From Selaginella moellendorffii (lineage: Eukaryota; Plantae; Lycopodiophyta): a stretch of DNA of 64,000 nt. The stretch's first letter is position 1. Each line of letters opens with the position of its first letter. Both the position numbers and the translations under genes were made by a program. Where the stretch lies: positions 248,001-312,000 of the forward strand of contig NW_003314290.1 of assembly GCF_000143415.4 (NCBI RefSeq), written 5' to 3'. Shown here in pieces: positions 27,991-45,244 of the stretch. The notes below the pieces were generated by a model that made no database searches, was not told the DNA's origin, and saw only the letters and a program-made list of their open reading frames with translations.

Positions 27991-29017
27991 ATGGCGGAGG
28001 CGAGCTCCATCTTGTTCTTGGCACTCTTCCTGGCGCTCTTCGTCGCGGCGCCGGCATTGGATTCGCCGCAGTACACTGTGGTGCATTCCGAGTCGGATTT
28101 CGAGGTGCGGTGGTATCGGCCGTCGGCATGGATGACCTCGCAGCAGGAGGATTTGTCTTTCACTAGCGCAACGCTGAAAGGATTTCACAGGTATGTCAGG
28201 CTAGATTATGGCATTTGGGATGAATTGGTCTTCTATGCTTCTTGGTTTTCTTGTGTTTCATTGCTTGTAAGAGTGTCTTGCTGAATGTTTTTTATTTCTG
28301 TGTAAGTTTCTTCTATCGATAGATCATCTCGAATGGTTTTTACTTTTGTGTATCTTATGAATTTCGATTGAGAAGATCCTTTTTGTCGATAGTTTCATGT
28401 CGAATGGTTTTTATCTTTGTGTCCTGTGAATTTCGATTGAGAAGTTTATTTTGTCGATAGATCATCTCGGATGTATCTCGTCATAGGAGAAAGCAACTAA
28501 GAATTTTTATGTCTTTTTCCACAGATTGTTCCAGTTCATCCAAGGCGCCAACTTAAACTCTTCGCGAATCCCAATGACAGCTCCCGTGCTCACCGGCATA
28601 GTCCCTTCCACGGGCCCGTTTTGCTCCTCAACCTTCCGGGTCCGCTTCTTTCTACCACCGCAATTCGAAAAGTCGCCTCCAGTGGCACTCCCGGAGCTCA
28701 GCCTCGCTCCCGAGTTTTGGCCCGAGCGATGCATCGCCACCCGCTCCTTCTCGGGCTTTGCCAAAGACGAGAACGTCGCGGTGGAGGCCGCAAAGCTTGC
28801 CGCCAGCTTGAGCAAGACACTGTGGAGCAATGCTACGTCCAAGGAAACCATCTCCGGCGTCGACTCCTACTCCATCGCGCAGTACGACAGCCCTTTCAAG
28901 ATCTTTAGCCGCCACAACGAAGTCTGGGTGCCTCTCGCGAAATGCTCGGCCGCCAAAAACTGTCTCCCAGAACGAGTTGCCGACGACAATACCGAAGAAC
29001 GAAGAACTTCCTCCTAG
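27991..29017 (+). CDS. SOUL/HBP heme-binding protein with signal peptide; 2 exons
   Basis: DSPQYTVVHSESDFEVRWY..GFHR|LFQFIQGAN..IPMTAPV..AQYDSPF..RHNEVW. Confidence 0.93.
28316..28469. repeat. ~70-bp imperfect tandem repeat (about 2.2 copies) in the SOUL intron
   Basis: tcgatag..tcgaatggttttta..tgaatttcgattgagaag is repeated. Confidence 0.8.
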
Positions 29018-32074: not shown

Positions 32075-32529
32075 ACCATGGAACTTGATATACAGTTCTT
32101 AGGGAAAGGAAACAAACTCTTGCAAACAAGTCTTGACAAAATCGAAAACACTTTGGGCAGATTGACGATGCCTTTGAGTAGAAGATCTGTCTTTCCGTAC
32201 GATTTGATCATGGTCACGCCAAAACTGATCCTTCTCGTGGCTTTTTTCTGCTGTGGGAGCAATCGAATCAGGGTGCATTCGCATGAGCTCCAGTGTCGAA
32301 GGTGGTGGACCACTCCAGGGTAACTTCATAGACGGCACTGCGATCCGATCACACATTTATGGTGTTGCAACAACCATCTTGCTGAATCACCTTCGAAACA
32401 AAATGTTAAGGTTCCTTGTGGGCTCCATACTTTTGAGTGTTTGCTTACAAGGTAATATCTCAAGCATTATTGAGCTTAGACATCTTATCACTGATTTATT
32501 ATACAATCTATTGAGCCAATAGTCCTTAC

Positions 32530-35500
32530 TTCTTTGTTTCTTGAGGTTGAAGTGTTGGTATTACTTTTAGCTGATTCAATCTAACCATCATCATGAAGAT
32601 CAGATCAAACTTTTAAAGGGGCAATTGCTTAATTGTATGGCCTAGTTCATGTTATTCTTCCCTCCCTTATGGAGCATTGGTAAGATCTTAGCCAATCTAG
32701 GCTAGATCATTTTTCCCTTCCACTGGAGAAGAATAATAATAATGATAATAAACCTAGGTAACCGCTAGGGAATCACAACTATGGATTACTTTGTTAATGA
32801 GTCATTTTGGATATCTTTTTCATACTACCACAACAATAGGAGATTAGTATTGTTAGTTCCTTTATTAGTCTTTTTTTGTTCAAGTATTAATAACCTAAGT
32901 TTTGGCCACATAAGCATATGGAAAGAAGTGATTATTTACCCAAACATACTATATTTAAAAAATGTAAAGAATGGCCTAAACACTATAGTGTTATTTCTAT
33001 ATCCAAATTCAAAATATAAAACCATTCCATATTTATTAAGTTTTTGAATTTATCCCAAAAACCATCTCGAAGGATTGGGGTGAAAGGCCAAAATGAGCTT
33101 TCATATAAGGGAGGAAAGGATTATAGAATTCAAAATATATAATAAAGATAGTAGATAGGTGTGGCATGGAAGATCACTTGAGGTTGTTAATTTTTATTTT
33201 GCATTTAGATTGATTCTAAACCTAACCTCTATACTGTGGAATACTTATATTTTTTCGTATCAATATACTAAAAAAATATTAAATTCCATTTTATATATTA
33301 GTCTTAGTGTTAGGATTTTAGATACTCTACAACTATTGTAATGTTACTCTATACTCCTATTTTTTCCTTCCTTTGCATTGAGAATTCCTTCTTAATACCA
33401 TGAAACTTAGGTCCTTATGGATTTAAGGATTAGGTTTTCTTTGTAGTTATTCTATGATAATTCATCATAAAATATATTATAAAAACCATATATTTAGTAT
33501 TAGAACATTAATTCTAACAAATACTATCCAATGAGATTGGGCAATATGATAATCTAAGTAGCTCAAAGTGTAATCTCAAGTTGATAATGTGCCTTATACA
33601 CATAAACTCATGCAAATTATACATCTTATCCATCTAATGAGTCTAAACAAAAGCTTATGGTACAAGATGGTACACACTAAAATCCATATCTAGAGACATA
33701 TGCAAAACCACAACCACCATATATATACTAGTGAACTTGATATTAACCCATCATAAGTAGTTACTATAGATTAAAGTAAACCTCCTTTGAGTTTATCATG
33801 AGTGGTAAATATGCTAATTTGTAGTTGTTTAGGATAACACTAGTGGATCCTTCCTAGACATGATATTGAATTTATTCCCCTTCAATAATATATTTCAAAG
33901 AATAATTGAGTATCCCTTTTATATGCAATAAGTTTATATCAATAATTTATTTTTACCTTTCAAATGTTATATAGCTTTGCAAAAGAATCTTATTTCAAAT
34001 TTAAATTTTTTAAATTCTGACAAAATTGATATTTAAATAAAAAGAAGAACATAGTATGGATTCTAAGATATTATGACAAACTTTTCTATTATTATACATA
34101 GTAAATATTTAAATCTCTTCTACAGTTTTATCTATATAAAGTGCAAAATTTCTAAATATATAGTATAAAAAATATGCTAATATTTAAAAATTAAAACTAT
34201 ACTACACTTAAAAATTGAGCTTAATTCTTCAACTCATGAGTTCAAGAACGGTCCACACTTGGCAACAACATCATCTTCAAGGAAGCTACTCACTATAGTT
34301 CCTACAGACATTTGCCATCGCATTCAATTTTCAATACTTGACATCCCTTTAGAGGTAGATTTTGTCATGGCATACTATCAACAGCTTGGCTCCACAACTT
34401 TAAAGGATTCTATGATACTTGGATATGCATGGCACAAGCAAGTGAATGGCATCACCACTTGAAAACTTGGGAAGATAGACACTCTACAATGCTTGTGACT
34501 TCTCTTTGAATGCACAAGGCTCTTCATAGGTTATAACATCTTTATCCAGAAGGACTTCTCATGAGTTACCAATGGTTTTCCTAGAGTTGATCAACTCTAC
34601 TTGCCTGAGATGGAGACTTTCCATTGCAATAGCACTAATATCATGCTTCACAATTAAGGAATGCCTCATAGATATCAACACTCAGTTGAGGCAACTCCTT
34701 TTTCTTCTGAGTTCACTTCTAGCATCACCACCTTTGTATCTACCTTCAACTCAATGAATGGAGCTCTCCATCTTTTGCATCAAGGTCTTGTACTTTGGCT
34801 TGCATGGCAAATGTTCTGGTCCAGAAGAGATTCTGGAAAAGCTGAGTGTCTTGTAGAATCTCAACTCTAGAAGCTAATATTTTCCAGCTAGTTGGACCTG
34901 ATGTACACATAGAAGCCTAGATACATTGGACAGATGATGTACCTGCCACCTCTTTTTCAGAAAGTTTTGCCACTAGGTATAACAATAATTCAAAAGCACA
35001 AAACATTATAATACTGCAGCTACCAATCCTGACATCCACAATCCCCTCCACTACTTTTTACCACCATCCACACCTTTCTCTCATCCAAATCTAGGGCATA
35101 TATTTCTCTCATCCCTCCTTTCTTCTAGCTTTGGTTCCCATTCACTTTCCTATACTTCTCTTCTCACCTATTACTTCTTCACACCTTGCATTTTGGTTTC
35201 TCCTATTATTTTTTCTAGACTTCTCATTCATAATTTATATGGTTTCCTTTGTGACTCCAAACTCTCTATTTCTTTTGTTTATTTACTTTGTTTTGGTTTC
35301 TCCAGTTTTCTATAGTTCCCCAAACCAGACATCACATTAAACTTCTGAAGATTGAGAAGTTCTCTTCATGCTACAAACATGCTCAGTCCACCATGGTTGC
35401 CTGATTGGGATGTGAGCCACATCCATGAGCCATTAGCCACCTACAAAGGGGCAGGCAAAGATACCCCCACTCCCCAACAATCTACAATTGCCCCCATATC

Positions 35501-36300
35501 AATGGCTCTTCCCTCACAAGTTTCAGCATTTCTTCATCATGTTAGACCCAGTTTACTTGCTCTATAAAATCCACAATTCTAGAAATGAACAAAGAAGATT
35601 GAGAGTAAAAAAAGAAAAATAAAAAAGAAAGAGAAAGAAAAGATCTCACCACAAAGGTGGTGAAGATGGCAAGCCAGAATAATAGATGAGGCGGCTTCTA
35701 ATGAGAGAAGGTGAGCTGGTCTTAAACCAGGTTAAGCAGCTCCAAACAATAGCAATCTTTGTTGCAATGCTGTTAGAAGTGTGGCAAATGTCCACTAACC
35801 ATTAGAGGAGATAGAAGAGGGTGCCAGCTGTTATGTCCACACCAAAGAGTCCACCTAGTTGCCTGAGGTACCAAGTTCAACTGGTTGGAAGAATAACACT
35901 TGACCACACCATCACATCATTTTCATGCATCCATTTTCACTTTTACACTTACCACCAATTGACAACAGTATTTCTTTGCTTTCTAGCCACATTTTGACCA
36001 AGGTTCTGACAATGACTGACTTAAGGATGAGGTTGCATTTGCATATTCACTATCTAGAGTTTGTTTTCATTTGATTCACCTTGCTTTTCACCTTCTTCTC
36101 TTGCTACTTCCATTTTTTGGTGTGTAGTTTACGCTTAGAGTTTCCCTCTAACCCTAAACTCTACACCACTTTCTTCTCCTTTTCTAATCATCTTTCTTTC
36201 CATTTTTCATCTTTCCTTTGTTTTATTTCCATATTTCTCAACTTTTGCAGTTGCGTTTTTCTAAGTATTTGGTAGAAGTCTTCAATATGACTTCTTTAAC
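32530..36300. mobile_element. AT-rich, CpG-depleted region of decayed repeats/pseudogenes; possible PPT + LTR start near 33107-33125
   Basis: Sharp compositional shift and no long ORFs; purine tract aagggaggaaagga. Family not identifiable. Confidence 0.45.
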
Positions 36301-36904
36301 ATCGTGGGTTCTCACATAGCAAAGCCTAATGCAATCCTTCATGGTCACCTATTGAAAGACTCCATAGATTTCAGAGGAGGAATATTCTCCATCGAGGGTA
36401 AAACAAAAGATTAGAGTTGTGGAGTCTTGGAATTTGTCATGAGAATGAGTTAGGAATTACCCTCACCCAATCCTCTCTATAGCAGTAGTGTAGCACAAAC
36501 TTGACTTGCTGATTGGTCGCCACTCTGGATCCGCCCATTTCTTGACACACCTTTTAAACACCGAAGAAAGACATAGTTACAAGCAGTTTCCCCTTCGGCC
36601 ATCCATTTTAGATTTAGGCTACTTGCTCCAGTTACCACTTTCAGCAGCTTTGATGGAGGAGCCATGGTCTTTTGCATGTGGATGCAGCCTAAAGGACCTG
36701 ATTCCAGATTACTTGCCAGGATCCCCTCACGCTAACCAGGAGGAATTGGAACAGCCTGGCTCTTTGGAGTTGCCATCTGAGGAAAACCCCAAAGTAAGTT
36801 TGGGAATTAGGAGGATAGCCGCCTAAAAGTTGATAAAATTTGAAGCGAGTTTAAACTTCAAAGGTCTATAAATTGCTTTCAGAAATAGGGTTTTGGAATT
36901 TAGG

Positions 36905-38260
36905 ATGGCGCAGCTTATGGCGCGGCGGCGGATTGCCCCATTTTTCTACAACCGAGCGCTGGAGCTTGGTCGTCTCGAAACAGCGGGAAACGGTGAGCTG
37001 CTAGTGCTTACAGGACCTCCGAACTCTGGCAAGTCGGCATTGCTGTCCGAGTTTAAGGAAAGGATGCAGGCAGAGCGCAAGGGATTCCCAATCCTCATCG
37101 ATATGCGCGCGGGAAAGTTCAACACTGCAGCTAGCTTCAGCAGGGAGCTCAAGGCCAAATCCGCCGTCCCTCTGATATCGCGTGTGGTCAGTGAGGGATT
37201 GAAGGCTGCCGTAGGTGTTGAGATTCCTGAAGAGGTAGAGATGGAAACTGGACAAGCTTTGAAGGAGGCTGTCCAACATGTCGAGTCTGCTAGTCCGGAC
37301 AATATGACGATTCTACTTGAGCGACTGGAAGCCTTGTTCAGCACGGTCAAAGCGTCTTTCACTGGGTTTACGCATGGAGCGGCCGCGGCATTCCCCACAC
37401 TGATCATAGACGAGGCAAACAGGCTTTACGAGTGGAGCGCTAGTCATGAAGAGCAGGAAAATCTGGCGACGCTTCAAGAGTGGTTGGTGATGATCACGAA
37501 GCAGAAGAAGCTGGCAAATGTGGTGTTAGCCAGCTCCGAGGACTCTTTCCGGATATGGATGGGAAACAGGGTAGGGCGAGAGAGGTTTACTGTGGCGGTG
37601 GTTGGCGATCTCGGAGACGAAGAGTCATTTGAGTTTTTCATGAGGGGGCTGACGTCGCCGTGGGAGTATTACTGTCCCAGCGTCAAGGATTACGTGTTTC
37701 CTCAGGCCTTGTGGGAAGAGATACACGGCTATGTTGGCGGGAGGATGCTACTGCTGGACAGAGTAGCAGCCAAGCTATCTCCACATCTGGCTTGTCTCAT
37801 GGTTAAAGGTGCAGATATGAAGGAGAGGAGCAAGGAAGTCGAGGCGGAGATGAAGCAGACATGGAATTCCTTCATGGTGTCACTCCGAAGCGCACTCTAC
37901 AATGAGATGCTGCTAGGCTGCGGCCCACACTCCCTAAGTGCAGAGTGGAAAAGGCCTGGTCCTACTGATGCTGCTCTAGCTGAGACCAAGCCCTTATGGA
38001 CGAAGGAGGAGTACCTTCAGCTCCTGGGAATGATCACTGCAAGGTCTGGTGTGGTCTCCGAAGATGAGGTCCTGGCAGCGGGAGTGTCGGAGCAAGCTCT
38101 CAAGAGCCTCATAATGCACAACTTTGCTCATTACAGGGACATTGGGGAGTGGGGAGGCACGGATCTTGCCTGGTACAAAGGAGGATTTCCTGTTGTTATG
38201 GCAATGTCCATGCCGTACTTTCATGCTATGAAGGACGTTTTAGCGCGGCATGGACTTTGA
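36905..38260 (+). CDS. Intronless P-loop ATPase of the 'archaeal ATPase' (ATPase_2/AAA_16, Yme2/RNA12-like) type
   Basis: FYNR..EL..L N-terminal motif; Walker A GPPNSGKS; Walker B LIIDEAN; VVLASS sensor; GGRM helical motif. First in-frame ATG is at 36905. Confidence 0.8.
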   Translation: MAQLMARRRIAPFFYNRALELGRLETAGNGELLVLTGPPNSGKSALLSEFKERMQAERKGFPILIDMRAGKFNTAASFSRELKAKSAVPLISRVVSEGLKAAVGVEIPEEVEMETGQALKEAVQHVESASPDNMTILLERLEALFSTVKASFTGFTHGAAAAFPTLIIDEANRLYEWSASHEEQENLATLQEWLVMITKQKKLANVVLASSEDSFRIWMGNRVGRERFTVAVVGDLGDEESFEFFMRGLTSPWEYYCPSVKDYVFPQALWEEIHGYVGGRMLLLDRVAAKLSPHLACLMVKGADMKERSKEVEAEMKQTWNSFMVSLRSALYNEMLLGCGPHSLSAEWKRPGPTDAALAETKPLWTKEEYLQLLGMITARSGVVSEDEVLAAGVSEQALKSLIMHNFAHYRDIGEWGGTDLAWYKGGFPVVMAMSMPYFHAMKDVLARHGL

Positions 38261-40629
38261 ATGGCAACGTGAGTTATTAGGGTTGTGTAATCCAGGCTAT
38301 AGTTTACCAAACCTTACAAGGCCATTGACAATAAAAGAAAATCACTCCAGCGCCAGATTTTTTAAACGAGCTCTCGCCCATTGTGCTCGCAATCTTGGCC
38401 TCCAATTCAACCGTGGGGAGCTGAAGACGTTACCACCGAGTGTGTCCACAATGGAATCTTCGTCAGCCTCCAATGACTTGTCTGGGGTGTCCAGTGATGT
38501 GTGTCTCAATAGGTGCTGACTGATCGGCTCTGGTCTCTCATGGATGCTGTATACCTGGGATTCCGCAGTTCTCCACAACATTGCGAGCTGGGTTCCGGCA
38601 TTACTATATAAGTGCTGATATTTTTTTGCCTTTAGCTTGTTGTTAAAAGTTTAACTTTGAAATAATCAACATTTTTGCACCATTTGGAGAACAAAGAAAG
38701 AAATTCTCGGCATTTCCTTTTTCAACCTTTGGAAAACAGATTTTTCGTTCATTCGTCTATAATACAGAATCCCAAAACCTACGGCCGCTGTCTAGATGTT
38801 TATCCATGATCTTGCTAGATTTTTATCCATGATCGAAAGAGGCTGGAATCATGTTGGAGGTCAACTTCGAGGTTGGTTTCCAAGGCCACTTTAGGTGGCA
38901 CGCTCGAGAGCTTACTCTTGTCCATGGTTGAGAGTGGCGGAAATGGCTCCTCTCATCAAGTGTTCACCCGATCACCAATGTGAGAAGGGCTTCAAGAACA
39001 AATGGCAAGTTAGAAAGCTCAAAAAGAATATCAAAGTTAGAAATCAAAACCTCTCAGATAGAGCACCATCTTTCAGAGCTTTTGCTGTCAAGTTCCAAGT
39101 CTCTTGAGTATATGAACAACAAGAAGAGAAACTGGAAGAGGCTGGATCACGAGATATAAAAGAAGAGGAAACGATTGATCGATCGATGACCTAACTGACC
39201 ACCGTCACAAAATTTTAAGATGCTACACATCCGGGTGCTACTAAAGAAGAAGAAAACGCTCCACAAATCAAACCATTGATAGTAAAACGAAGATATTTTT
39301 GCTGCTTTGCTTGTGCCAAAGTTTGACTTCTTTGTTTGACCGGTATCGACCGTTGTGAAGAATATTTTTTCAGCATCCGGGTAGGAATGCAATGAACGTG
39401 CGCCATAAGCGCTTAATGCATGCCATATGCGCGGCCCCAAGCTATAAGAAGTGACATTGTGCTCGTCGAACAAAATCTGCCTGGTGAGGGAGTTAAGGCT
39501 TGAAGAATGCACGATCCTCTAGGATCCTCTAGATCTTTCAAAATGAATCTGTTATGTATGGAATGACAACTATATTTTTAGGAGTGCTGTATGCTGCCTT
39601 CAACCTTCAAATAGTGTTGATTTTTCTTCACACTGATTCAAGGTTTTTTATGTGAATCTTTAAACTAACCTCGTTTAGTTGAGTTTTCTTGCAGCCTAGA
39701 TAGAGTAAGGTGCTTGCAATAAAATTCTTGAGCACCATCTTTTGAACATGCTTTGGTGAAATACAATATGGTTTGGAAAAAGAATAAGTTTTCAATAGTG
39801 TACATAGGTTTGACATATGTTTTGAAATTGGAACATATTTTGGTTTGTAAAATAAATTTCATATAATTCTCTGATGCCAATTTTGAAATTTGAACATAAT
39901 ACAGTTTTTAATGTAGCTAACATATAATTCTCAAAAGCACAATTTTGAAACTGAATGTAAATAACATATGATTCTCTTAAGCAAATAACTAAGTTTTACT
40001 AAGTTTTATATACTAACAATAGTTTTAGATTGCTTTCGATCATTCCTTAATGATGTAGAATTATATTTGGACTTTCTATAACTGGAAATCCTACTTTTTA
40101 AGGATAATGGTGCCATCTTCTGGAAGTAAGAATTGGCCTAGAAAAAAAACAAAGCCAAGATTCTGGAATGCCACCCACTGCTGGCTCTATGCCTAGGCAC
40201 TGCCAAGCTTTTATTGACAAAAAATAAGAAAAAGGAAGAGACACAGTTAACATCCAAGAGTCACAGTGGTCAACTTGACCTGAGGGAAGCTGGAACATTC
40301 CCTCGCTACCAGTCCAGCACAAGCCTTCAATGCAACAATAAAAGTTCAATGGTGCACTCACAGTTGGAGGAGGAGACCATTGTTACAGACAGCTGCAGTT
40401 GTCCGTTGAGATCTTCTTAGTGCTCATCATAGACAGTTCTATAAGACACCATTGCAAAAGATAATTCCATTTTCCCACACTTCAAGTACATGTCAAGGAG
40501 TGTGTTGGCAACGAAGATGTCGTTGTCCTTGCAGCCCGTGCACGAATTTCCATCCCTCTGTTCAAGGCCCAGACTTTCACCATCTAGTTTCTGCTGCCAA
40601 CTTCATTGCTTCTTCGTTCGCAGCCAGGT

Positions 40630-41950: not shown

Positions 41951-44303
41951 ATGGAATGGCGGGGGGGTGCGCCTTACGCGCCGGATCGTGCTGCTTCTGG
42001 TGCCGAGAGCGATGCATCGCCATCGCTAGGCAAGCGCAAGACTCCGTCGGAACTGCGGGTGAGAATTTGTCCCCCGTTTCTTCTTTCGTGAGATGATGCT
42101 AATCGGATCTGTAGCGCGAGCAACTCAAACGTGCCAATAGCCAGGATGCTGGCTCAGCGCAAAGGTACGCAAGCGGCATTTGGATATTTCAAGCGTCATG
42201 GATGAGATGCTTTGCTTTTTTGTTTTTTTTTTTGGTTTTTGACAGGCCCGACGCACCAAAGCCGCCGAGGTTTTCTGAGACGCGCGCTTCGGATGTGTGT
42301 GCTCCTACCAAGTCTGCTGAAAAGCCCAAGTTTAGCTTGTCCAAATACAAAGTAAGTTCTCGTGTTCTCTTCGATCGCTAGAACTTAAAGAGGATACATT
42401 TATATAGGACGAACACTCTACAAAAGGGAAAGAAATTAAGCAGTAAGTGATGATTCTTTTCTTCGTGTTGAGTTTCAAAGTTGAGTTTCTTTCCAGGAAT
42501 CAAGGAGAGGCATCGACGAGCAATTCAAAGTTCAAGAATGTCGCTGAGCTTTCTTGTAGAATACAGCAACCACAAGCGTCTCCAGCCGTGGACATGGTAG
42601 TTTTTGTTTTTCAGTTTCGTGTTTCAACTAACATCTCTTTGAACAGGCGGAAGCTATAAAAGCTCTTGCAGTGATCAAGGCGCCTGAGAAAGTTCCTCGT
42701 CCAATTAGCAGGTCTTCATCCGCGCCTGCTGAATTTGACAACCAGAGGACGAAAAAACTTCCAGTATTGCCACTAGATCTCACTCTAAAGCTTACTGCTC
42801 GTTTTCTTTCCTGTACATCGTTTCACTGGTGAGCTTTCGGTTGTTATACTTTTCGGGTTTGGTGTTAAGGTTTATGCTTCTGATCACAGGTGCCATAGGT
42901 TTGGTGTACAAAATCAGTTTCAAGGGTTGAAGCAGTTTATACAATCTGGTCTAGGCGTAGAAAATCCACACGGTCACAAAGCGTCAGAAGTCGAAAGTGA
43001 TTTTTGGAAAGGCCTGCATTCCTGGGTTTACCCTCAGCTTTCATTTCCTCCAGAAGTTCTTTCTGCCTTAATGTCACCCGCAGCTCGCGCTGGTATTGTC
43101 TTTTTCAGTTTCTGCGAAAGTCAGCTGATTTCTTCCTTTCTTCTTTGGTCTTAGCAGGAAGCTCTTTTTTGGAACAAAGACAACGTGACTGGGAAGATTC
43201 GTTTCATTCTCTGTACTATGCATTCCGGAACAAGCTCTGCAACATTTTTTACTGTAAGGTTTCATTTCTGTCCACGTTTTAATCTCCCGTTCGTGCAGTT
43301 TGTGGTTCCCAATTTGTAGTAGCATTCTTGTGCGGAAGATCACAGGAGCAAATTTGTGCGTATCTCTCAAGGTCAACTCGTGGACTTCGTGCTCTTCTTC
43401 AAAAACAAGTATGTATGCTTATTCTTTAAATATATATCGTGAAACTCACTCAGTTTCTTGACAAGGGTGTAAGCTTTTCAATGCCTTTGTGCAAACTGGA
43501 CTCAAAACCTGCGTCAGCAGAAGAGCTTCAAGAACTCTCTGCGTTTGAGAAGTTGAATCCTGGGCAGGTAGTTTTGACAAGTTTTGATATGAAACGGGAG
43601 GTGACTTTTGCTGAAAAATTAACAGACACGACTGGTGGACTCGATGGCTGCAGTTGACAATAGCGTCCAATCTCTGCTAGCTTTTAACGGAAGCCAAAGC
43701 GTCCACCGCCTGTATGATTTCCTGTTGAACTACAGGTATGCTTGCTTATGATGTACGTCACATTGAGGAACTTTCTGCCAGATTTTTTGTGGGAAGCATG
43801 ACTCGTGCTGATGTACCTGTACTCTATTCCCCAGTTCCCTTTCATAACGCATCGTTGAAAGTCCCCGAGGCAGGTGTTTTTGCATCGACCAGTCCAATGC
43901 ATCATGTTTATTGACGTGAAAGCTGCAGGTGTGCAGTAAGCAGATGCAGGTCATTGACGGATCTGCCGTGTCCACGAACAACTCGTACAGCCTTGAGATA
44001 AAAGCTACGTGCTTGGCACCATGGGTGATTTCCAGGCTGTGTGTTGCCTTGAGGAGGCTCCACAAAGAGACTTTTGAAGTAAGGTAAGTAGTTCCTTTTA
44101 GTTATTTTGAGCACCAAACTGAAACAAGATCTGGTTCTTTTAGTTTCACTACAGAGCCACTCAGCGAAGGTCTCAACATCGCGCAGCTTCACGAGGAAGC
44201 TGCATGCAACGAGTTGGGCTTCGGTCTGGCTTCAACATTCGCTTCGGGGTCGATCAGACAGATCAAGTGCATAGACGGTTCCTACGTGGCTACAGTAAGC
44301 TAG
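41951..44303 (+). CDS. DONSON: DONSON (downstream neighbour of SON) homologue; multi-exon
   Basis: KRKTPSELR|REQLKR, LPLDLTLK..RF..SFHW, SWVYPQ, WEDSFHSLY, STRGLRALL, LYDFLLN, VPVLYSPVPF. Confidence 0.88.
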
Positions 44304-44450
44304 TAAACGCGTAAGAATTCCCTTGCTCTGTTCGCCACGTCTTGTAGCAAGGGTAGTCAGGTGGCTGGCCCTCCAGCATCCACGTGTAGATAACGGTTCT
44401 AAAATAGTTTAAAGATCAAGATTTTGCGGAGAAGTTTGTGGCAAGACAGG

Positions 44451-45244
44451 ATGGCCAGGCTTGTAGTAGTGTTCGTCGCGCTGACAATCGCGAGCAGCGC
44501 GGTTGCTGCTCCTTCCAGTGGGTTTGAACAGGTTGTACAGCTCTATTCAGCTGAAGGCTCCGAGAGTTGTGGACCCAAGCTCTCAATTGAGACCCCGCAT
44601 TGCAAGATCGAGGCAAGGAAGAACGGCTACGAGCTCCGCAAGTATCCCGAGGGACAGGTCTGTAACAATTCTTACTTTTTGTTTTTCCTTGACTTGTTCT
44701 TCAACTAACAGAACAATTTTTTCTTTCTTTTTCTTACGAATCAGGTGTGGGTGGAGACTCTGGTTGCAAATTCATCCTACTCGGCAGCGGTTTCCGTGGG
44801 CTTTTACCGTCTCTTTTACTACATCTCTGGTAAGAATGAGAAAGGCGAGGTCATAGAAATGACTGCCCCGGTTTTGGTTCATCCCTACGAGGAGCGTGGA
44901 GGATACAAAGTCTCCTTCTATGCACCAAGCAGGTACTTCAGAACAGTCCAGAGCTTCCGTTTACTGTTGTACTCCTTGGCAGATTTAAGTCTCACAAGGA
45001 CCTCCCAAAGCCCATGGACAAGAACGTCAAGTTCCTGGTGACAAAAGAACATACTTACGCGGTGTCCGGGCCTTTCGGAGGCTTTCCAACCGAGCCTGAC
45101 TACGAAAAGAGGCTCAAGGCCTTGAAAGAAGCGCTGGACAAGGACGACGTCGAGTATAACGGCGAGAAAGTCTACTACGCCGGGTACAGCAGTCCTTTCG
45201 AGTTTGTCAATCGGAAGCAAGAGGTCCACTTACTCACCAAGTGA
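44451..45244 (+). CDS. Second SOUL/HBP heme-binding protein with signal peptide; 3 coding exons
   Basis: IETPHCK..YELRKY|..GFYRLFYYISGKN..IEMTAPV..|..AGYSSPF..RKQEV. Confidence 0.92.

What the first reader, a model, noticed from the sequence alone, without database searches (positions are those of the whole stretch)
36905..38260. Intact intronless 'archaeal-type' ATPase alone in a decayed-repeat zone
Seen: a ~450-aa uninterrupted, CpG-containing ORF with complete Walker A/B motifs, flanked by kilobases of AT-rich, CpG-poor debris. Its motifs (FYNRxxEL, hhIDEAN, VVLASS, GGRM) do not fit ordinary plant AAA or NB-ARC families. From memory they resemble ATPase_2/STAND-like and Yme2/RNA12-like proteins of prokaryotes, fungi and protists. 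Inference: a recently mobilised or horizontally acquired gene, possibly a stand-alone STAND-like signalling/immune NTPase or cargo of an unrecognised mobile element. This is my best candidate here for an undescribed protein system.
Basis: partly seen in the sequence, partly recalled or inferred. Interest (0 to 1): 0.7.

Follow-up and report, generated by a model that had tools for sequence, protein, structure and literature searches.

The report
Spikemoss stand-alone archaeal-type ATPase gene
This is an intact gene of the spikemoss Selaginella for a small ATP-driven switch protein of the little-studied "archaeal-type ATPase" family; spikemosses share it with ferns and green algae, so it is not a recent arrival, the family in Selaginella is already in print, and its function is untested.

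Summary
The ORF is real: window 36905-38260 (+), 451 aa, identical to Selaginella moellendorffii SELMODRAFT_415937. It passes Pfam ATPase_2 (PF01637). It has complete Walker A and B motifs. Its high-confidence model matches the two solved archaeal ATPase_2 proteins best (2qen Z 23.9, 2fna Z 22.4), then plant NLR NB-ARC, ORC/Cdc6, CED-4 and TnsC.

The "recent, mobile or horizontally acquired, undescribed" reading does not hold.
- Selaginella has about ten loci of this family, at least two of them decayed.
- In a careful tree all vascular-plant copies form one clade (99/97) inside a green-algal clade (100/100). A fern sequence is sister to the query's subfamily.
- Paralogues share only coding sequence with the window. 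There are no shared flanks, LTRs or TIRs.
- The window copy keeps ancestral residues 21:4 against its decayed sister.

Armaleo et al. 2019 (PMC6652019) already list seven "archaeal ATPases" in Selaginella. This scan has also noted two other copies in this genome (s1-395719, s1-353512).

Function is unknown. The most likely mechanism is a nucleotide-gated oligomeric switch with a winged-helix output domain. The finding is ordinary to mildly interesting.

The parts
36905..38260 (+). Coding sequence of the ATPase_2 protein (451 aa plus stop), identical to residues 45-495 of SELMODRAFT_415937
   Evidence: ORF list. 100% match to P0001. Pfam ATPase_2 45.6 bits against gathering score 33.2.
36653..36793 (+). 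Exon 1 of the GenBank model (47 acidic residues), with no counterpart in any paralogue; probably a prediction artefact or 5' UTR
   Evidence: P0001 sequence set against the window. Relatives start MARR.../MSLW... at the position of ATG 36905 or Met5. blastn similarity to paralogue loci begins only at 36987.
36794..36913 (+). Intron of the GenBank model (GTAAGT...CAG, 120 nt). It contains the in-frame stop at 36887-36889 and the ATG at 36905
   Evidence: Read directly from the sequence.
36941..36967 (+). N-terminal FFYNRALEL motif (the hhGRExE-type motif of STAND/ATPase_2 proteins); R17 is present in 48 of 49 aligned family members
37013..37036 (+). Walker A / P-loop GPPNSGKS; K43 is invariant in 53 of 53
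37397..37420 (+). Walker B TLIIDEAN; D169 in 51 of 53, catalytic E170 in 48 of 53
37127..37363 (+). Three-helix insert (residues 75-153) between strands beta2 and beta3, at the place of the initiator-specific motif of ORC/Cdc6-type AAA+ proteins
   Evidence: Secondary structure of the AF2 model. The comparison with the ORC motif is inference.
37517..37549 (+). Strand beta4 and sensor-1 region NVVLASSEDSF; S211 in 49 of 53
37616..37804 (+). Helical lid domain (residues about 238-300) with the GGR motif; G278 in 52 of 53. R280 is a possible sensor-2 arginine, but only in 17 of 53
37991..38248 (+). C-terminal winged-helix domain plus a closing helix (residues about 363-448). Conserved W365, H409, R411 (40 of 47) and D420 (41 of 46)
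   Evidence: Helix-strand-helix-helix-strand-strand order in the model. Alignment to the full length of 2qen and 2fna. Column counts.
32501..36500 (.). AT-rich, CpG-depleted, non-coding tract upstream (decayed repeats). It is not part of a unit shared with paralogues
   Evidence: GC 27-40%, CpG o/e 0-0.24. Only short ORFs. Three short matches to scattered places in L005.
39501..40500 (.). Smaller CpG-poor patch downstream, with a 61-nt tandem duplication at 39820-39941

Best explanation
Window 36905-38260 is an intact nuclear gene of Selaginella moellendorffii (SELMODRAFT_415937), kept under selection. It encodes a 50-kDa stand-alone P-loop NTPase of the 'archaeal-type' ATPase_2 family. The protein has an AAA+-like nucleotide-binding domain with a three-helix insert, a helical lid and a C-terminal winged helix, and no other domain.

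Origin: it is one of about ten loci of a family that duplicates and decays in Selaginella. The family was inherited within the green lineage (trebouxiophyte and other green algae, lycophytes, ferns). It is neither a recent transfer nor transposon cargo. It simply sits beside a 4-kb tract of decayed, CpG-depleted repeats.

How it most likely works (inferred from the fold and conserved residues, not shown): K43 binds ATP. D169/E170 hydrolyse it. The nucleotide state switches the protein between a closed monomer and an oligomer, as in its structural neighbours ORC/Cdc6, TnsC and STAND proteins. The winged helix then binds nucleic acid or a partner. The cellular role is unknown. Print offers only a thermo/desiccation-tolerance hypothesis.
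For: Identity:
- 100% match to P0001 on a 1.9-Mb plant scaffold.
- Pfam ATPase_2 is above its gathering score. A family profile hits 2fna at 1.4e-11 and 2qen at 1.2e-7.

Fold:
- AF2 pLDDT 88.8, pTM 0.89.
- Foldseek's top two hits are 2qen and 2fna.
- VIA-align gives Z 23.9 and 22.4 over 320 and 311 residues, then NLR NB-ARC at about 17, and ORC/Cdc6, CED-4 and TnsC at about 15.

Catalytic residues are conserved: K43 53/53, D169 51/53, E170 48/53.

Family and descent:
- Only 194 hits in 1.84 billion proteins.
- Named relatives are Selaginella paralogues, Adiantum, Coccomyxa, Trebouxia, Myrmecia, Nannochloris and Tetradesmus.
- Careful tree: green clade 100/100, vascular-plant clade 99/97, fern sister to the query's subfamily 99/96, bacterial clade separate.

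Selection:
- The decayed sister copy in L005 has about 20 deletions and a stop.
- At 167 outgroup-conserved sites the query keeps the ancestral residue 21 times against 4 (p = 0.0009).

Not mobile:
- No flank similarity to paralogue loci, and no LTR or TIR.

Prior description: PMC6652019.
Against:
- ATP hydrolysis, oligomerisation and nucleic-acid binding are all inferred.
- No conserved arginine finger was found at residues 222-227 (R227 in 19 of 53). The sensor-2 arginine is not conserved family-wide (17 of 53). A classical AAA+ ring mechanism is therefore uncertain.
- Absence from seed plants and bryophytes was not tested directly. An ESM Atlas cluster of 85 streptophyte proteins scored as the nearest by language-model features, and its relation is unchecked.
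- The tree is unrooted, so the direction of any ancient exchange with bacteria is open.
Confidence: 0.8

Rival explanations
1. Ancient horizontal origin. The green-lineage family (or its bacterial sister) arose from a single old transfer between prokaryotes and an ancestor of green algae and plants, followed by vertical descent and many losses. This is what Armaleo et al. suggest. It concerns origin only and is compatible with the best explanation for everything after that.
For: - The distribution among eukaryotes is patchy, and the Pfam family is mainly prokaryotic.
- The sister clade in the tree holds bacteria: a Parachlamydiales MAG, a gammaproteobacterial MAG beside a RecG-like helicase gene, and a contig with RuvABC.
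- The CDS is probably intronless.
Against: - The tree is unrooted. The bacterial members belong to groups that live inside eukaryotic cells, so a eukaryote-to-bacterium transfer is equally possible.
- The HGT claim for the Galdieria 'archaeal ATPases' has been disputed in print (PMC6629376).
- No archaeal sequence was among the nearest relatives found.
Confidence: 0.3
2. One reading: a recently mobilised or recently horizontally acquired gene, possibly cargo of an unrecognised mobile element lodged in repeat debris.
For: - The CDS is probably intronless, and 4 kb of decayed repeats lie upstream.
- There are several dispersed copies, including pseudogenes. The paralogue loci fetched also have several kb without annotated genes around them.
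Against: - The nearest copy is about 82% identical over aligned bases (dS 0.36) and is decayed.
- Similarity to L002, L004 and L005 begins and ends inside the CDS.
- No direct or inverted terminal repeats bracket the gene within 30-46 kb.
- A fern orthologue-like sister and a single vascular-plant clade place the family before the lycophyte-fern split.
- GC and CpG of the ORF match neighbouring host genes.
Confidence: 0.04
3. A minimal STAND-like immune or stress-signalling NTPase. The family duplicates and decays like resistance genes and could act as a nucleotide-gated oligomerising switch in defence, in a plant with very few NLRs.
For: - The three-domain core aligns to plant NLR NB-ARC modules (WRR4A, RPP1, NRC4) at Z about 17.
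- It has an hhGRExE-type N-terminal motif.
- The family has several loci with at least two pseudogenes.
- Some members match the nSTAND1, nSTAND3 or NACHT Pfam models at E below 0.001.
Against: - There is no sensor repeat and no effector domain. The protein ends just after the winged helix.
- No PADLOC defence model matches beyond P-loop noise.
- ORC/Cdc6 and TnsC, which are not immune proteins, align almost as well.
- There is no expression or genetic evidence.
- That Selaginella has few NLRs is my recollection and was not tested here.
Confidence: 0.1
4. A Yme2/RNA12-like organellar factor: the green counterpart of the AAA+ domain of fungal Yme2, acting in mitochondrial (or plastid) gene expression or membrane-protein biogenesis.
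For: - 13 of 53 family members match Pfam RNA12, best E 1.4e-12. Coccomyxa (42.5 bits) and Myrmecia (41.9 bits) are above the gathering score of 27.
- Several algal and bacterial members carry 60-130-aa N-terminal extensions.
- Yme2's AAA+ domain is also most like ORC/Cdc6 and forms a large homo-oligomer (PMC9284673).
Against: - The query itself has no RNA12 hit at E up to 1.
- It has no N-terminal extension: the conserved core starts at residue 13.
- It has no transmembrane helix and no RRM.
- It keeps a canonical Walker B DE, where Yme2 has DR.
- The acidic annotated exon 1 (computed pI 4.05) does not look like a presequence, and paralogues do not support it.
Confidence: 0.06

Closest known systems
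Pfam ATPase_2 (PF01637), 'ATPase domain predominantly from Archaea'; solved members PAB2304 of Pyrococcus abyssi (2qen) and SSO1545 of Sulfolobus solfataricus (2fna)
   Same: - The HMM match is above the gathering score.
- It has the same three-domain layout: nucleotide-binding domain, helical lid, winged helix.
- These are the best structural matches, at Z 23.9 and 22.4 over more than 310 residues.
[quoted passage not shown]
   Different: - Sequence identity is only about 16%.
- The plant protein is about 100 residues longer. It has a three-helix insert (residues 75-153) and a long linker helix (305-337).
- The host is a eukaryote.
- None of these proteins has a known function.
Eukaryotic 'archaeal ATPases' described by Armaleo et al. 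2019 (PMC6652019: Asterochloris 26, Galdieria 12, Selaginella 7 members) and, for Galdieria, by Schoenknecht et al. 2013 as cited there
   Same: It is the same Pfam family in the same species. The gene studied here is very probably one of the 7 Selaginella members counted there, and the family was already noted as expanded.
   Different: - That work proposed independent transfers from Archaea. Here the Selaginella copies group with fern and green-algal copies in one clade, and the nearest prokaryotes found are bacteria, not archaea.
- Fern members, pseudogene copies, the structural model and the RNA12 link are additions made here.
- I could not check whether this exact accession is in their figure.
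Yme2 / RNA12 (PF10443), the AAA+ domain of the fungal mitochondrial inner-membrane protein Yme2
   Same: - It is a related P-loop domain of the ORC/Cdc6-like kind.
- A quarter of the family members match this model as well.
- Yme2 needs its Walker motifs and forms a homo-oligomer (PMC9284673).
   Different: - The query does not match RNA12.
- It has no presequence, RRM or transmembrane segment.
- Its Walker B is DE, not DR.
STAND NTPases (NB-ARC of plant NLRs, CED-4/Apaf-1) and initiator-clade AAA+ proteins (ORC/Cdc6, TnsC)
   Same: - The NBD, helical domain and winged-helix core superposes at Z 14-17.6.
- It has the hhGRExE-like motif upstream of the P-loop.
   Different: - It has no N-terminal effector domain and no C-terminal repeat sensor (STAND features).
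- It does not match the NB-ARC or ORC/Cdc6 sequence models.
- No conserved arginine finger was found.

Membership tests
Pfam ATPase_2 (PF01637, archaeal-type ATPase) | Whole-protein HMM score at or above Pfam's gathering score | tested here: met
   45.6 bits against 33.2, E 9.6e-12, residues 14-248. 52 of 53 aligned relatives also match.
Pfam ATPase_2 (PF01637, archaeal-type ATPase) | Walker A GxxxxGK[ST] and Walker B hhhhDE | tested here: met
   GPPNSGKS at 37-44 and LIIDE at 166-170. K43 53/53, D169 51/53, E170 48/53.
Pfam ATPase_2 (PF01637, archaeal-type ATPase) | Fold of the solved members: nucleotide-binding domain, helical lid, C-terminal winged helix | tested here: met
   2qen Z 23.9 (320 aligned, rmsd 4.7) and 2fna Z 22.4 (311 aligned, rmsd 5.0), spanning model residues 10-444. 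They are also Foldseek ranks 1 and 2.
Pfam ATPase_2 (PF01637, archaeal-type ATPase) | ATP binding and hydrolysis | not testable with these tools
   This needs a biochemical assay. Only the catalytic residues are seen.
Green-lineage clade of eukaryotic 'archaeal ATPases' (Armaleo et al. 2019) | Groups with green-algal and other Selaginella members in a phylogeny, apart from prokaryotes | tested here: met
   Green clade 100/100, vascular-plant clade 99/97, 35 rows, IQ-TREE LG+C20 PMSF. The quick tree of 53 rows agrees.
STAND NTPases | NBD-HD-WHD core with an hhGRExE motif before the P-loop | tested here: met
   The core aligns to WRR4A, RPP1, NRC4 and CED-4 at Z 15-17.6. FFYNRALEL is present, with R17 in 48/49 and E20 in 47/49.
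STAND NTPases | Fused sensor (repeat) and/or effector domain flanking the NTPase core | tested here: not met
   The core starts at residue 13 and the protein ends at 451, right after the winged helix. There is no further Pfam domain.
STAND NTPases | Winged-helix histidine contacting the bound nucleotide (MHD-type contact) | not testable with these tools
   A conserved L-H-x-R motif is in the winged helix (H409 in 26/47, R411 in 40/47).
Yme2 / RNA12 (PF10443) | HMM match above the gathering score | tested here: not met
   The query has no RNA12 hit at E up to 1. Relatives do match: 13/53 at E below 0.001, with Coccomyxa at 42.5 and Myrmecia at 41.9 bits against a gathering score of 27.
Yme2 / RNA12 (PF10443) | Mitochondrial presequence, RRM and transmembrane segment before the AAA+ domain; Walker B hhhhDR (features as described in PMC9284673) | tested here: not met
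   There is no N-terminal extension and Walker B is DE.
Classical AAA+ / ORC-Cdc6 initiators | Conserved arginine finger after sensor 1, and a sensor-2 arginine in the lid | tested here: inconclusive
   R227 is in only 19/53 and R280 in 17/53 (N in 18/53). ORC/Cdc6 chains align at Z 14-16, but no ORC/Cdc6 sequence model matches the query.
Transposable-element cargo gene | Copies share flanks with defined termini (LTR or TIR) and target-site duplications | tested here: not met
   blastn of window 30-46 kb against three paralogue loci finds similarity only within 36987-38233. No bracketing repeats were found.

The most novel reading that the evidence does not exclude
The green-lineage ATPase_2 clade (green algae, lycophytes, ferns; apparently lost from seed plants) could be a minimal STAND ancestor-like switch used in stress or immune signalling, one that duplicates and decays like resistance genes. 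Its sister clade in Chlamydiae and Legionella-like bacteria could then reflect host-to-parasite gene capture. It might also be the missing link between archaeal ATPase_2 and the mitochondrial Yme2 AAA+ domain.
Probability: 0.1. Interest if true: 0.6.

Novelty: already known. Interest (0 to 1): 0.22.

Why it matters
The gene is a clean, intact example of a protein family with no known function in any organism. Plants that lack seeds share the family with green algae, while the named relatives found here include no seed plant. If its role (stress tolerance, nucleic-acid handling or signalling) were found, it would give a first function to the whole 'archaeal-type ATPase' family. It would also inform the disputed claims of archaeal gene transfer into algae. 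As a genome-scan finding it is not new: the family in Selaginella is in print, and this scan has already met two other copies.

Tried and rejected
Expression, the 5' end and the annotated intron remain untested.
2. The search for homologous proteins was used three times. It was saturated by common words each time and returned only 1, 2 and 4 hits. The exhaustive HMMER search was the useful one.
A tighter alignment, A3, worked and found 2 bacterial loci.
4. A single-sequence search of PDB sequences was blank. The profile search found 2fna and 2qen.
5. NCBIfam and PADLOC gave only P-loop-level noise.
6. Rfam found nothing in the window.
7. Full-text searches for the SELMODRAFT locus tags and for SRR4210093 found nothing. 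The organism behind the closest non-Selaginella-genome sequence, P0002, is therefore unidentified. I call it lycophyte-like only from its place in the tree.
8. The upstream debris has no ORF longer than 106 aa and no recognisable coding remnant.
10. TE cargo and recent HGT were considered and rejected (see rivals).
Full report
**Observation**

The window holds an open reading frame at 36893 (TTG) / 36905 (first ATG) to 38260 on the + strand, 451 aa from the ATG. An in-frame stop lies at 36887-36889, and the start context is AGGATGG.

- FFYNRALEL at residues 13-21
- Walker A GPPNSGKS at 37-44
- Walker B TLIIDEAN at 165-172
- VVLASS at 206-211
- GGRM at 278-281

The ORF has 53.5% GC and CpG observed/expected 0.72. 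The 4 kb upstream (32501-36500) has 27-40% GC and CpG o/e 0-0.24. Downstream the picture is weaker: 38.5-39.5 kb is normal, and only 39.5-40.5 kb is CpG-poor.

The gene is not isolated. The window carries ordinary plant genes:
- VWA-RING
- PPR
- an S1-domain gene
- LTP
- SOUL and LEA_2 genes
- a DONSON/SOUL model
- an NPH3/BTB gene

The nearest annotated neighbours end about 5.9 kb upstream and start 3.7 kb downstream.

**What it is**

The protein is identical to Selaginella moellendorffii SELMODRAFT_415937 on the 1.9-Mb scaffold GL377594.1.

GenBank's 495-aa model adds a 47-residue acidic exon (36653-36793) and a 120-nt intron (36794-36913). No relative has that extension. Four relatives begin where ATG 36905 or Met5 lies:
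- P0151: MARRNLW..FFNR
- P0176: MARRIL..FYNR
- the copy in L004: MMARRIL..FYNR
- the transcript-like contig P0002: MSLW..FYNR

Nucleotide similarity to paralogue loci begins only at 36987.

**Family**

- Pfam places the protein in ATPase_2 (PF01637) at 45.6 bits against a gathering score of 33.2. AAA_22 also passes its cut-off (32.9 against 27), while AAA_16 (26.5 against 32.6) falls below its own. No NB-ARC, classical AAA or RNA12 match passes its cut-off.
- A profile of 53 relatives finds the two solved ATPase_2 proteins by sequence: 2fna at 1.4e-11 and 2qen at 1.2e-7.
- An AlphaFold2 model built on that alignment is confident, with pLDDT 88.8 and pTM 0.89.
- The model shows a five-stranded P-loop domain with a three-helix insert (75-153) between beta2 and beta3. 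It then has a helical lid (about 238-300), a long linker helix (305-337) and a winged helix (about 363-432) closed by a final helix.
- Foldseek ranks 2qen and 2fna first, followed by ORC/Cdc6, TnsC, MalT and an NLR.
- VIA-align gives Z 23.9 and 22.4 for the two archaeal proteins. It gives about 17 for the NB-ARC modules of WRR4A, RPP1 and NRC4, and about 15 for archaeal Orc/Cdc6, CED-4 and TnsC.

The 'Yme2/RNA12-like' recollection has a basis too. The query itself does not match RNA12, but 13 of 53 relatives do (best 1.4e-12). Coccomyxa (42.5 bits) and Myrmecia (41.9 bits) are above the gathering score of 27.

**Relatives and descent**

An exhaustive HMMER scan of 1.84 billion representative proteins finds only 194 hits at E up to 0.001, so this sub-family is small.

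The named relatives are:
- Selaginella paralogues: 430863/430855, 410880, 419622, 431113, 413500/432191, 425160/424095, 405930/427503 and 409440/440391. Some of these pairs are probably the two haplotypes of the assembly.
- The fern Adiantum capillus-veneris, with three proteins.
- Green algae: Coccomyxa, Trebouxia, Myrmecia, Nannochloris and Tetradesmus.
- The xanthophyte Tribonema.

A scan of prokaryotic reference genomes with the motif P[TIV]L[IF]IDEAN found a Parachlamydiales MAG. It also found a gammaproteobacterial MAG in which the gene lies next to a RecG-like helicase. Another relative sits on a contig with ruvA and ruvC.

A careful tree (35 rows, LG+C20 PMSF) shows the following:
- A green clade of 21 rows separates from the bacterial/marine clade at 100/100.
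- All vascular-plant sequences fall in one clade at 99/97.
- Adiantum GOP47_0027929 is sister to the Selaginella subfamily that holds the query, at 99/96.

A quick tree of 53 rows agrees. This pattern is what vertical inheritance predicts, with old duplications that predate the lycophyte-fern split. It is not what a recent acquisition predicts.

**Not a mobile unit**

- blastn of window 30-46 kb against the loci of three paralogues finds similarity only inside the coding sequence: 36987-38190 with L005, and two short stretches with L002. The only other matches are three short dispersed-repeat hits in the upstream debris.
- No direct or inverted repeats bracket the gene.
- The debris has no coding remnant.

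**Birth and death, and constraint**

- The closest copy, in L005 (annotated as the 186-aa SELMODRAFT_431113), aligns at 939 of 1143 positions. It has about 20 deletions, most of them not multiples of three, and one in-frame stop.
- The copy in L004 (419622) is split over three reading frames.
- Between the query and L005, dS is 0.355, dN is 0.16 and omega is 0.45.
- At 167 sites where two outgroups agree, the query keeps the outgroup residue 21 times and L005 keeps it 4 times (binomial p = 0.0009). The window copy is therefore the constrained one.

**Mechanism (inferred)**

Conserved positions across 53 relatives:

| Residue | Count |
|---|---|
| K43 | 53/53 |
| D169 | 51/53 |
| E170 | 48/53 |
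| R17 | 48/49 |
| R68 | 49/53 |
| S211 | 49/53 |
| G278 | 52/53 |
| R411 | 40/47 |
| D420 | 41/46 |

With a complete Walker A, a Walker B that has the catalytic glutamate, and an NBD-lid-winged-helix layout, the most likely mode of action is a nucleotide-gated conformational and oligomeric switch. Its winged helix would bind nucleic acid or a partner, as in ORC/Cdc6, TnsC, STAND proteins and, by report, Yme2 (PMC9284673).

Two features argue for caution:
- No arginine finger is conserved at 222-227.
- The sensor-2 arginine (R280) is present in only 17 of 53.

There is no sensor or effector domain, no defence-system match, no presequence and no membrane segment.

**What is already known**

Armaleo et al. 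2019 (PMC6652019, Fig. 12 and Additional file 7) describe 'archaeal ATPases' (PF01637) in eukaryotes. [quoted passage not shown] They also list Klebsormidium, Coccomyxa, Gonium, Rhizophagus and Puccinia.

They propose several independent transfers from Archaea, or one ancient transfer followed by losses, and a role in heat and desiccation tolerance. Rossoni et al. 2019 (PMC6629376) dispute the HGT origin of the Galdieria set.

This scan has itself already reported two other copies of the family in this genome (s1-395719 intact, s1-353512 frameshifted). Those reports reached conclusions like mine.

Additions made here:
- the fern members
- the single vascular-plant clade
- bacterial, not archaeal, nearest prokaryotes
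- the RNA12 overlap
- the structural model
- the relative-rate evidence for constraint on this copy

**Verdict**

The family guess is right. The 'recent, mobile, undescribed system' reading is not supported. This is an already described kind of gene with an unknown function.

**Limits**

- Absence from seed plants and bryophytes was not tested directly. An ESM Atlas cluster of 85 streptophyte proteins came up as the nearest by language-model features and was not checked.
- The trees are unrooted.
- The organism of P0002 (SRR4210093) is unidentified.

Noticed in passing
L005:9434-10561 (GL377711.1, SELMODRAFT_431113 locus): Closest copy of the window gene. It aligns at 939 of 1143 positions and has about 20 deletions and one in-frame stop. 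The 186-aa GenBank model covers only a fragment of a pseudogene.
   Followed up: yes
L004:9805-11064 (GL377608.1, SELMODRAFT_419622 locus): Paralogue whose coding sequence is split over three reading frames, and whose Walker A reads GPQDSGN before a frameshift. It is a pseudogene or an assembly error. The GenBank 339-aa model skips the N-terminal part.
   Followed up: partly
L010:270-1943 and L011:2863-4255: Homologues in a Parachlamydiales MAG and in a gammaproteobacterial MAG (the latter beside a RecG-like helicase, L011:264-2354 minus). Both carry N-terminal extensions of about 90-100 aa before the FFNR motif. Both groups typically live inside eukaryotic cells (from my own knowledge), so the direction of any gene exchange with eukaryotes is open.
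   Followed up: partly
P0106 (Tribonema minus KAG5176874.1) in the tree: The sequence of this xanthophyte (a stramenopile) is nested with the two Coccomyxa sequences at 99/99 inside the green clade. This may reflect a green-alga-derived gene or a transfer, but the branch is long (2.12).
   Followed up: no
window 36653-36913: The annotated first exon and 120-nt intron of SELMODRAFT_415937 have no counterpart in any relative. The model probably over-extends the 5' end.
   Followed up: partly
window 41951-45244 (L003:15299-18592): The annotated 732-aa product carries both DONSON and SOUL Pfam hits. Another SOUL gene lies at window 27991-29017. The 732-aa model may be a fusion of two genes.
   Followed up: no
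window 39820-39941: A 61-nt unit is present twice in tandem (72% identity) inside the CpG-poor patch downstream of the gene.
   Followed up: no
P0007 (Coccomyxa sp. Obi BDA41349.1, 892 aa): The ATPase_2/RNA12-like module occupies only residues about 417-690. The 400-residue N-terminal half has no Pfam match at E up to 0.01, and a coiled-coil-like tail follows. This is a fusion not seen in the Selaginella proteins.
   Followed up: no
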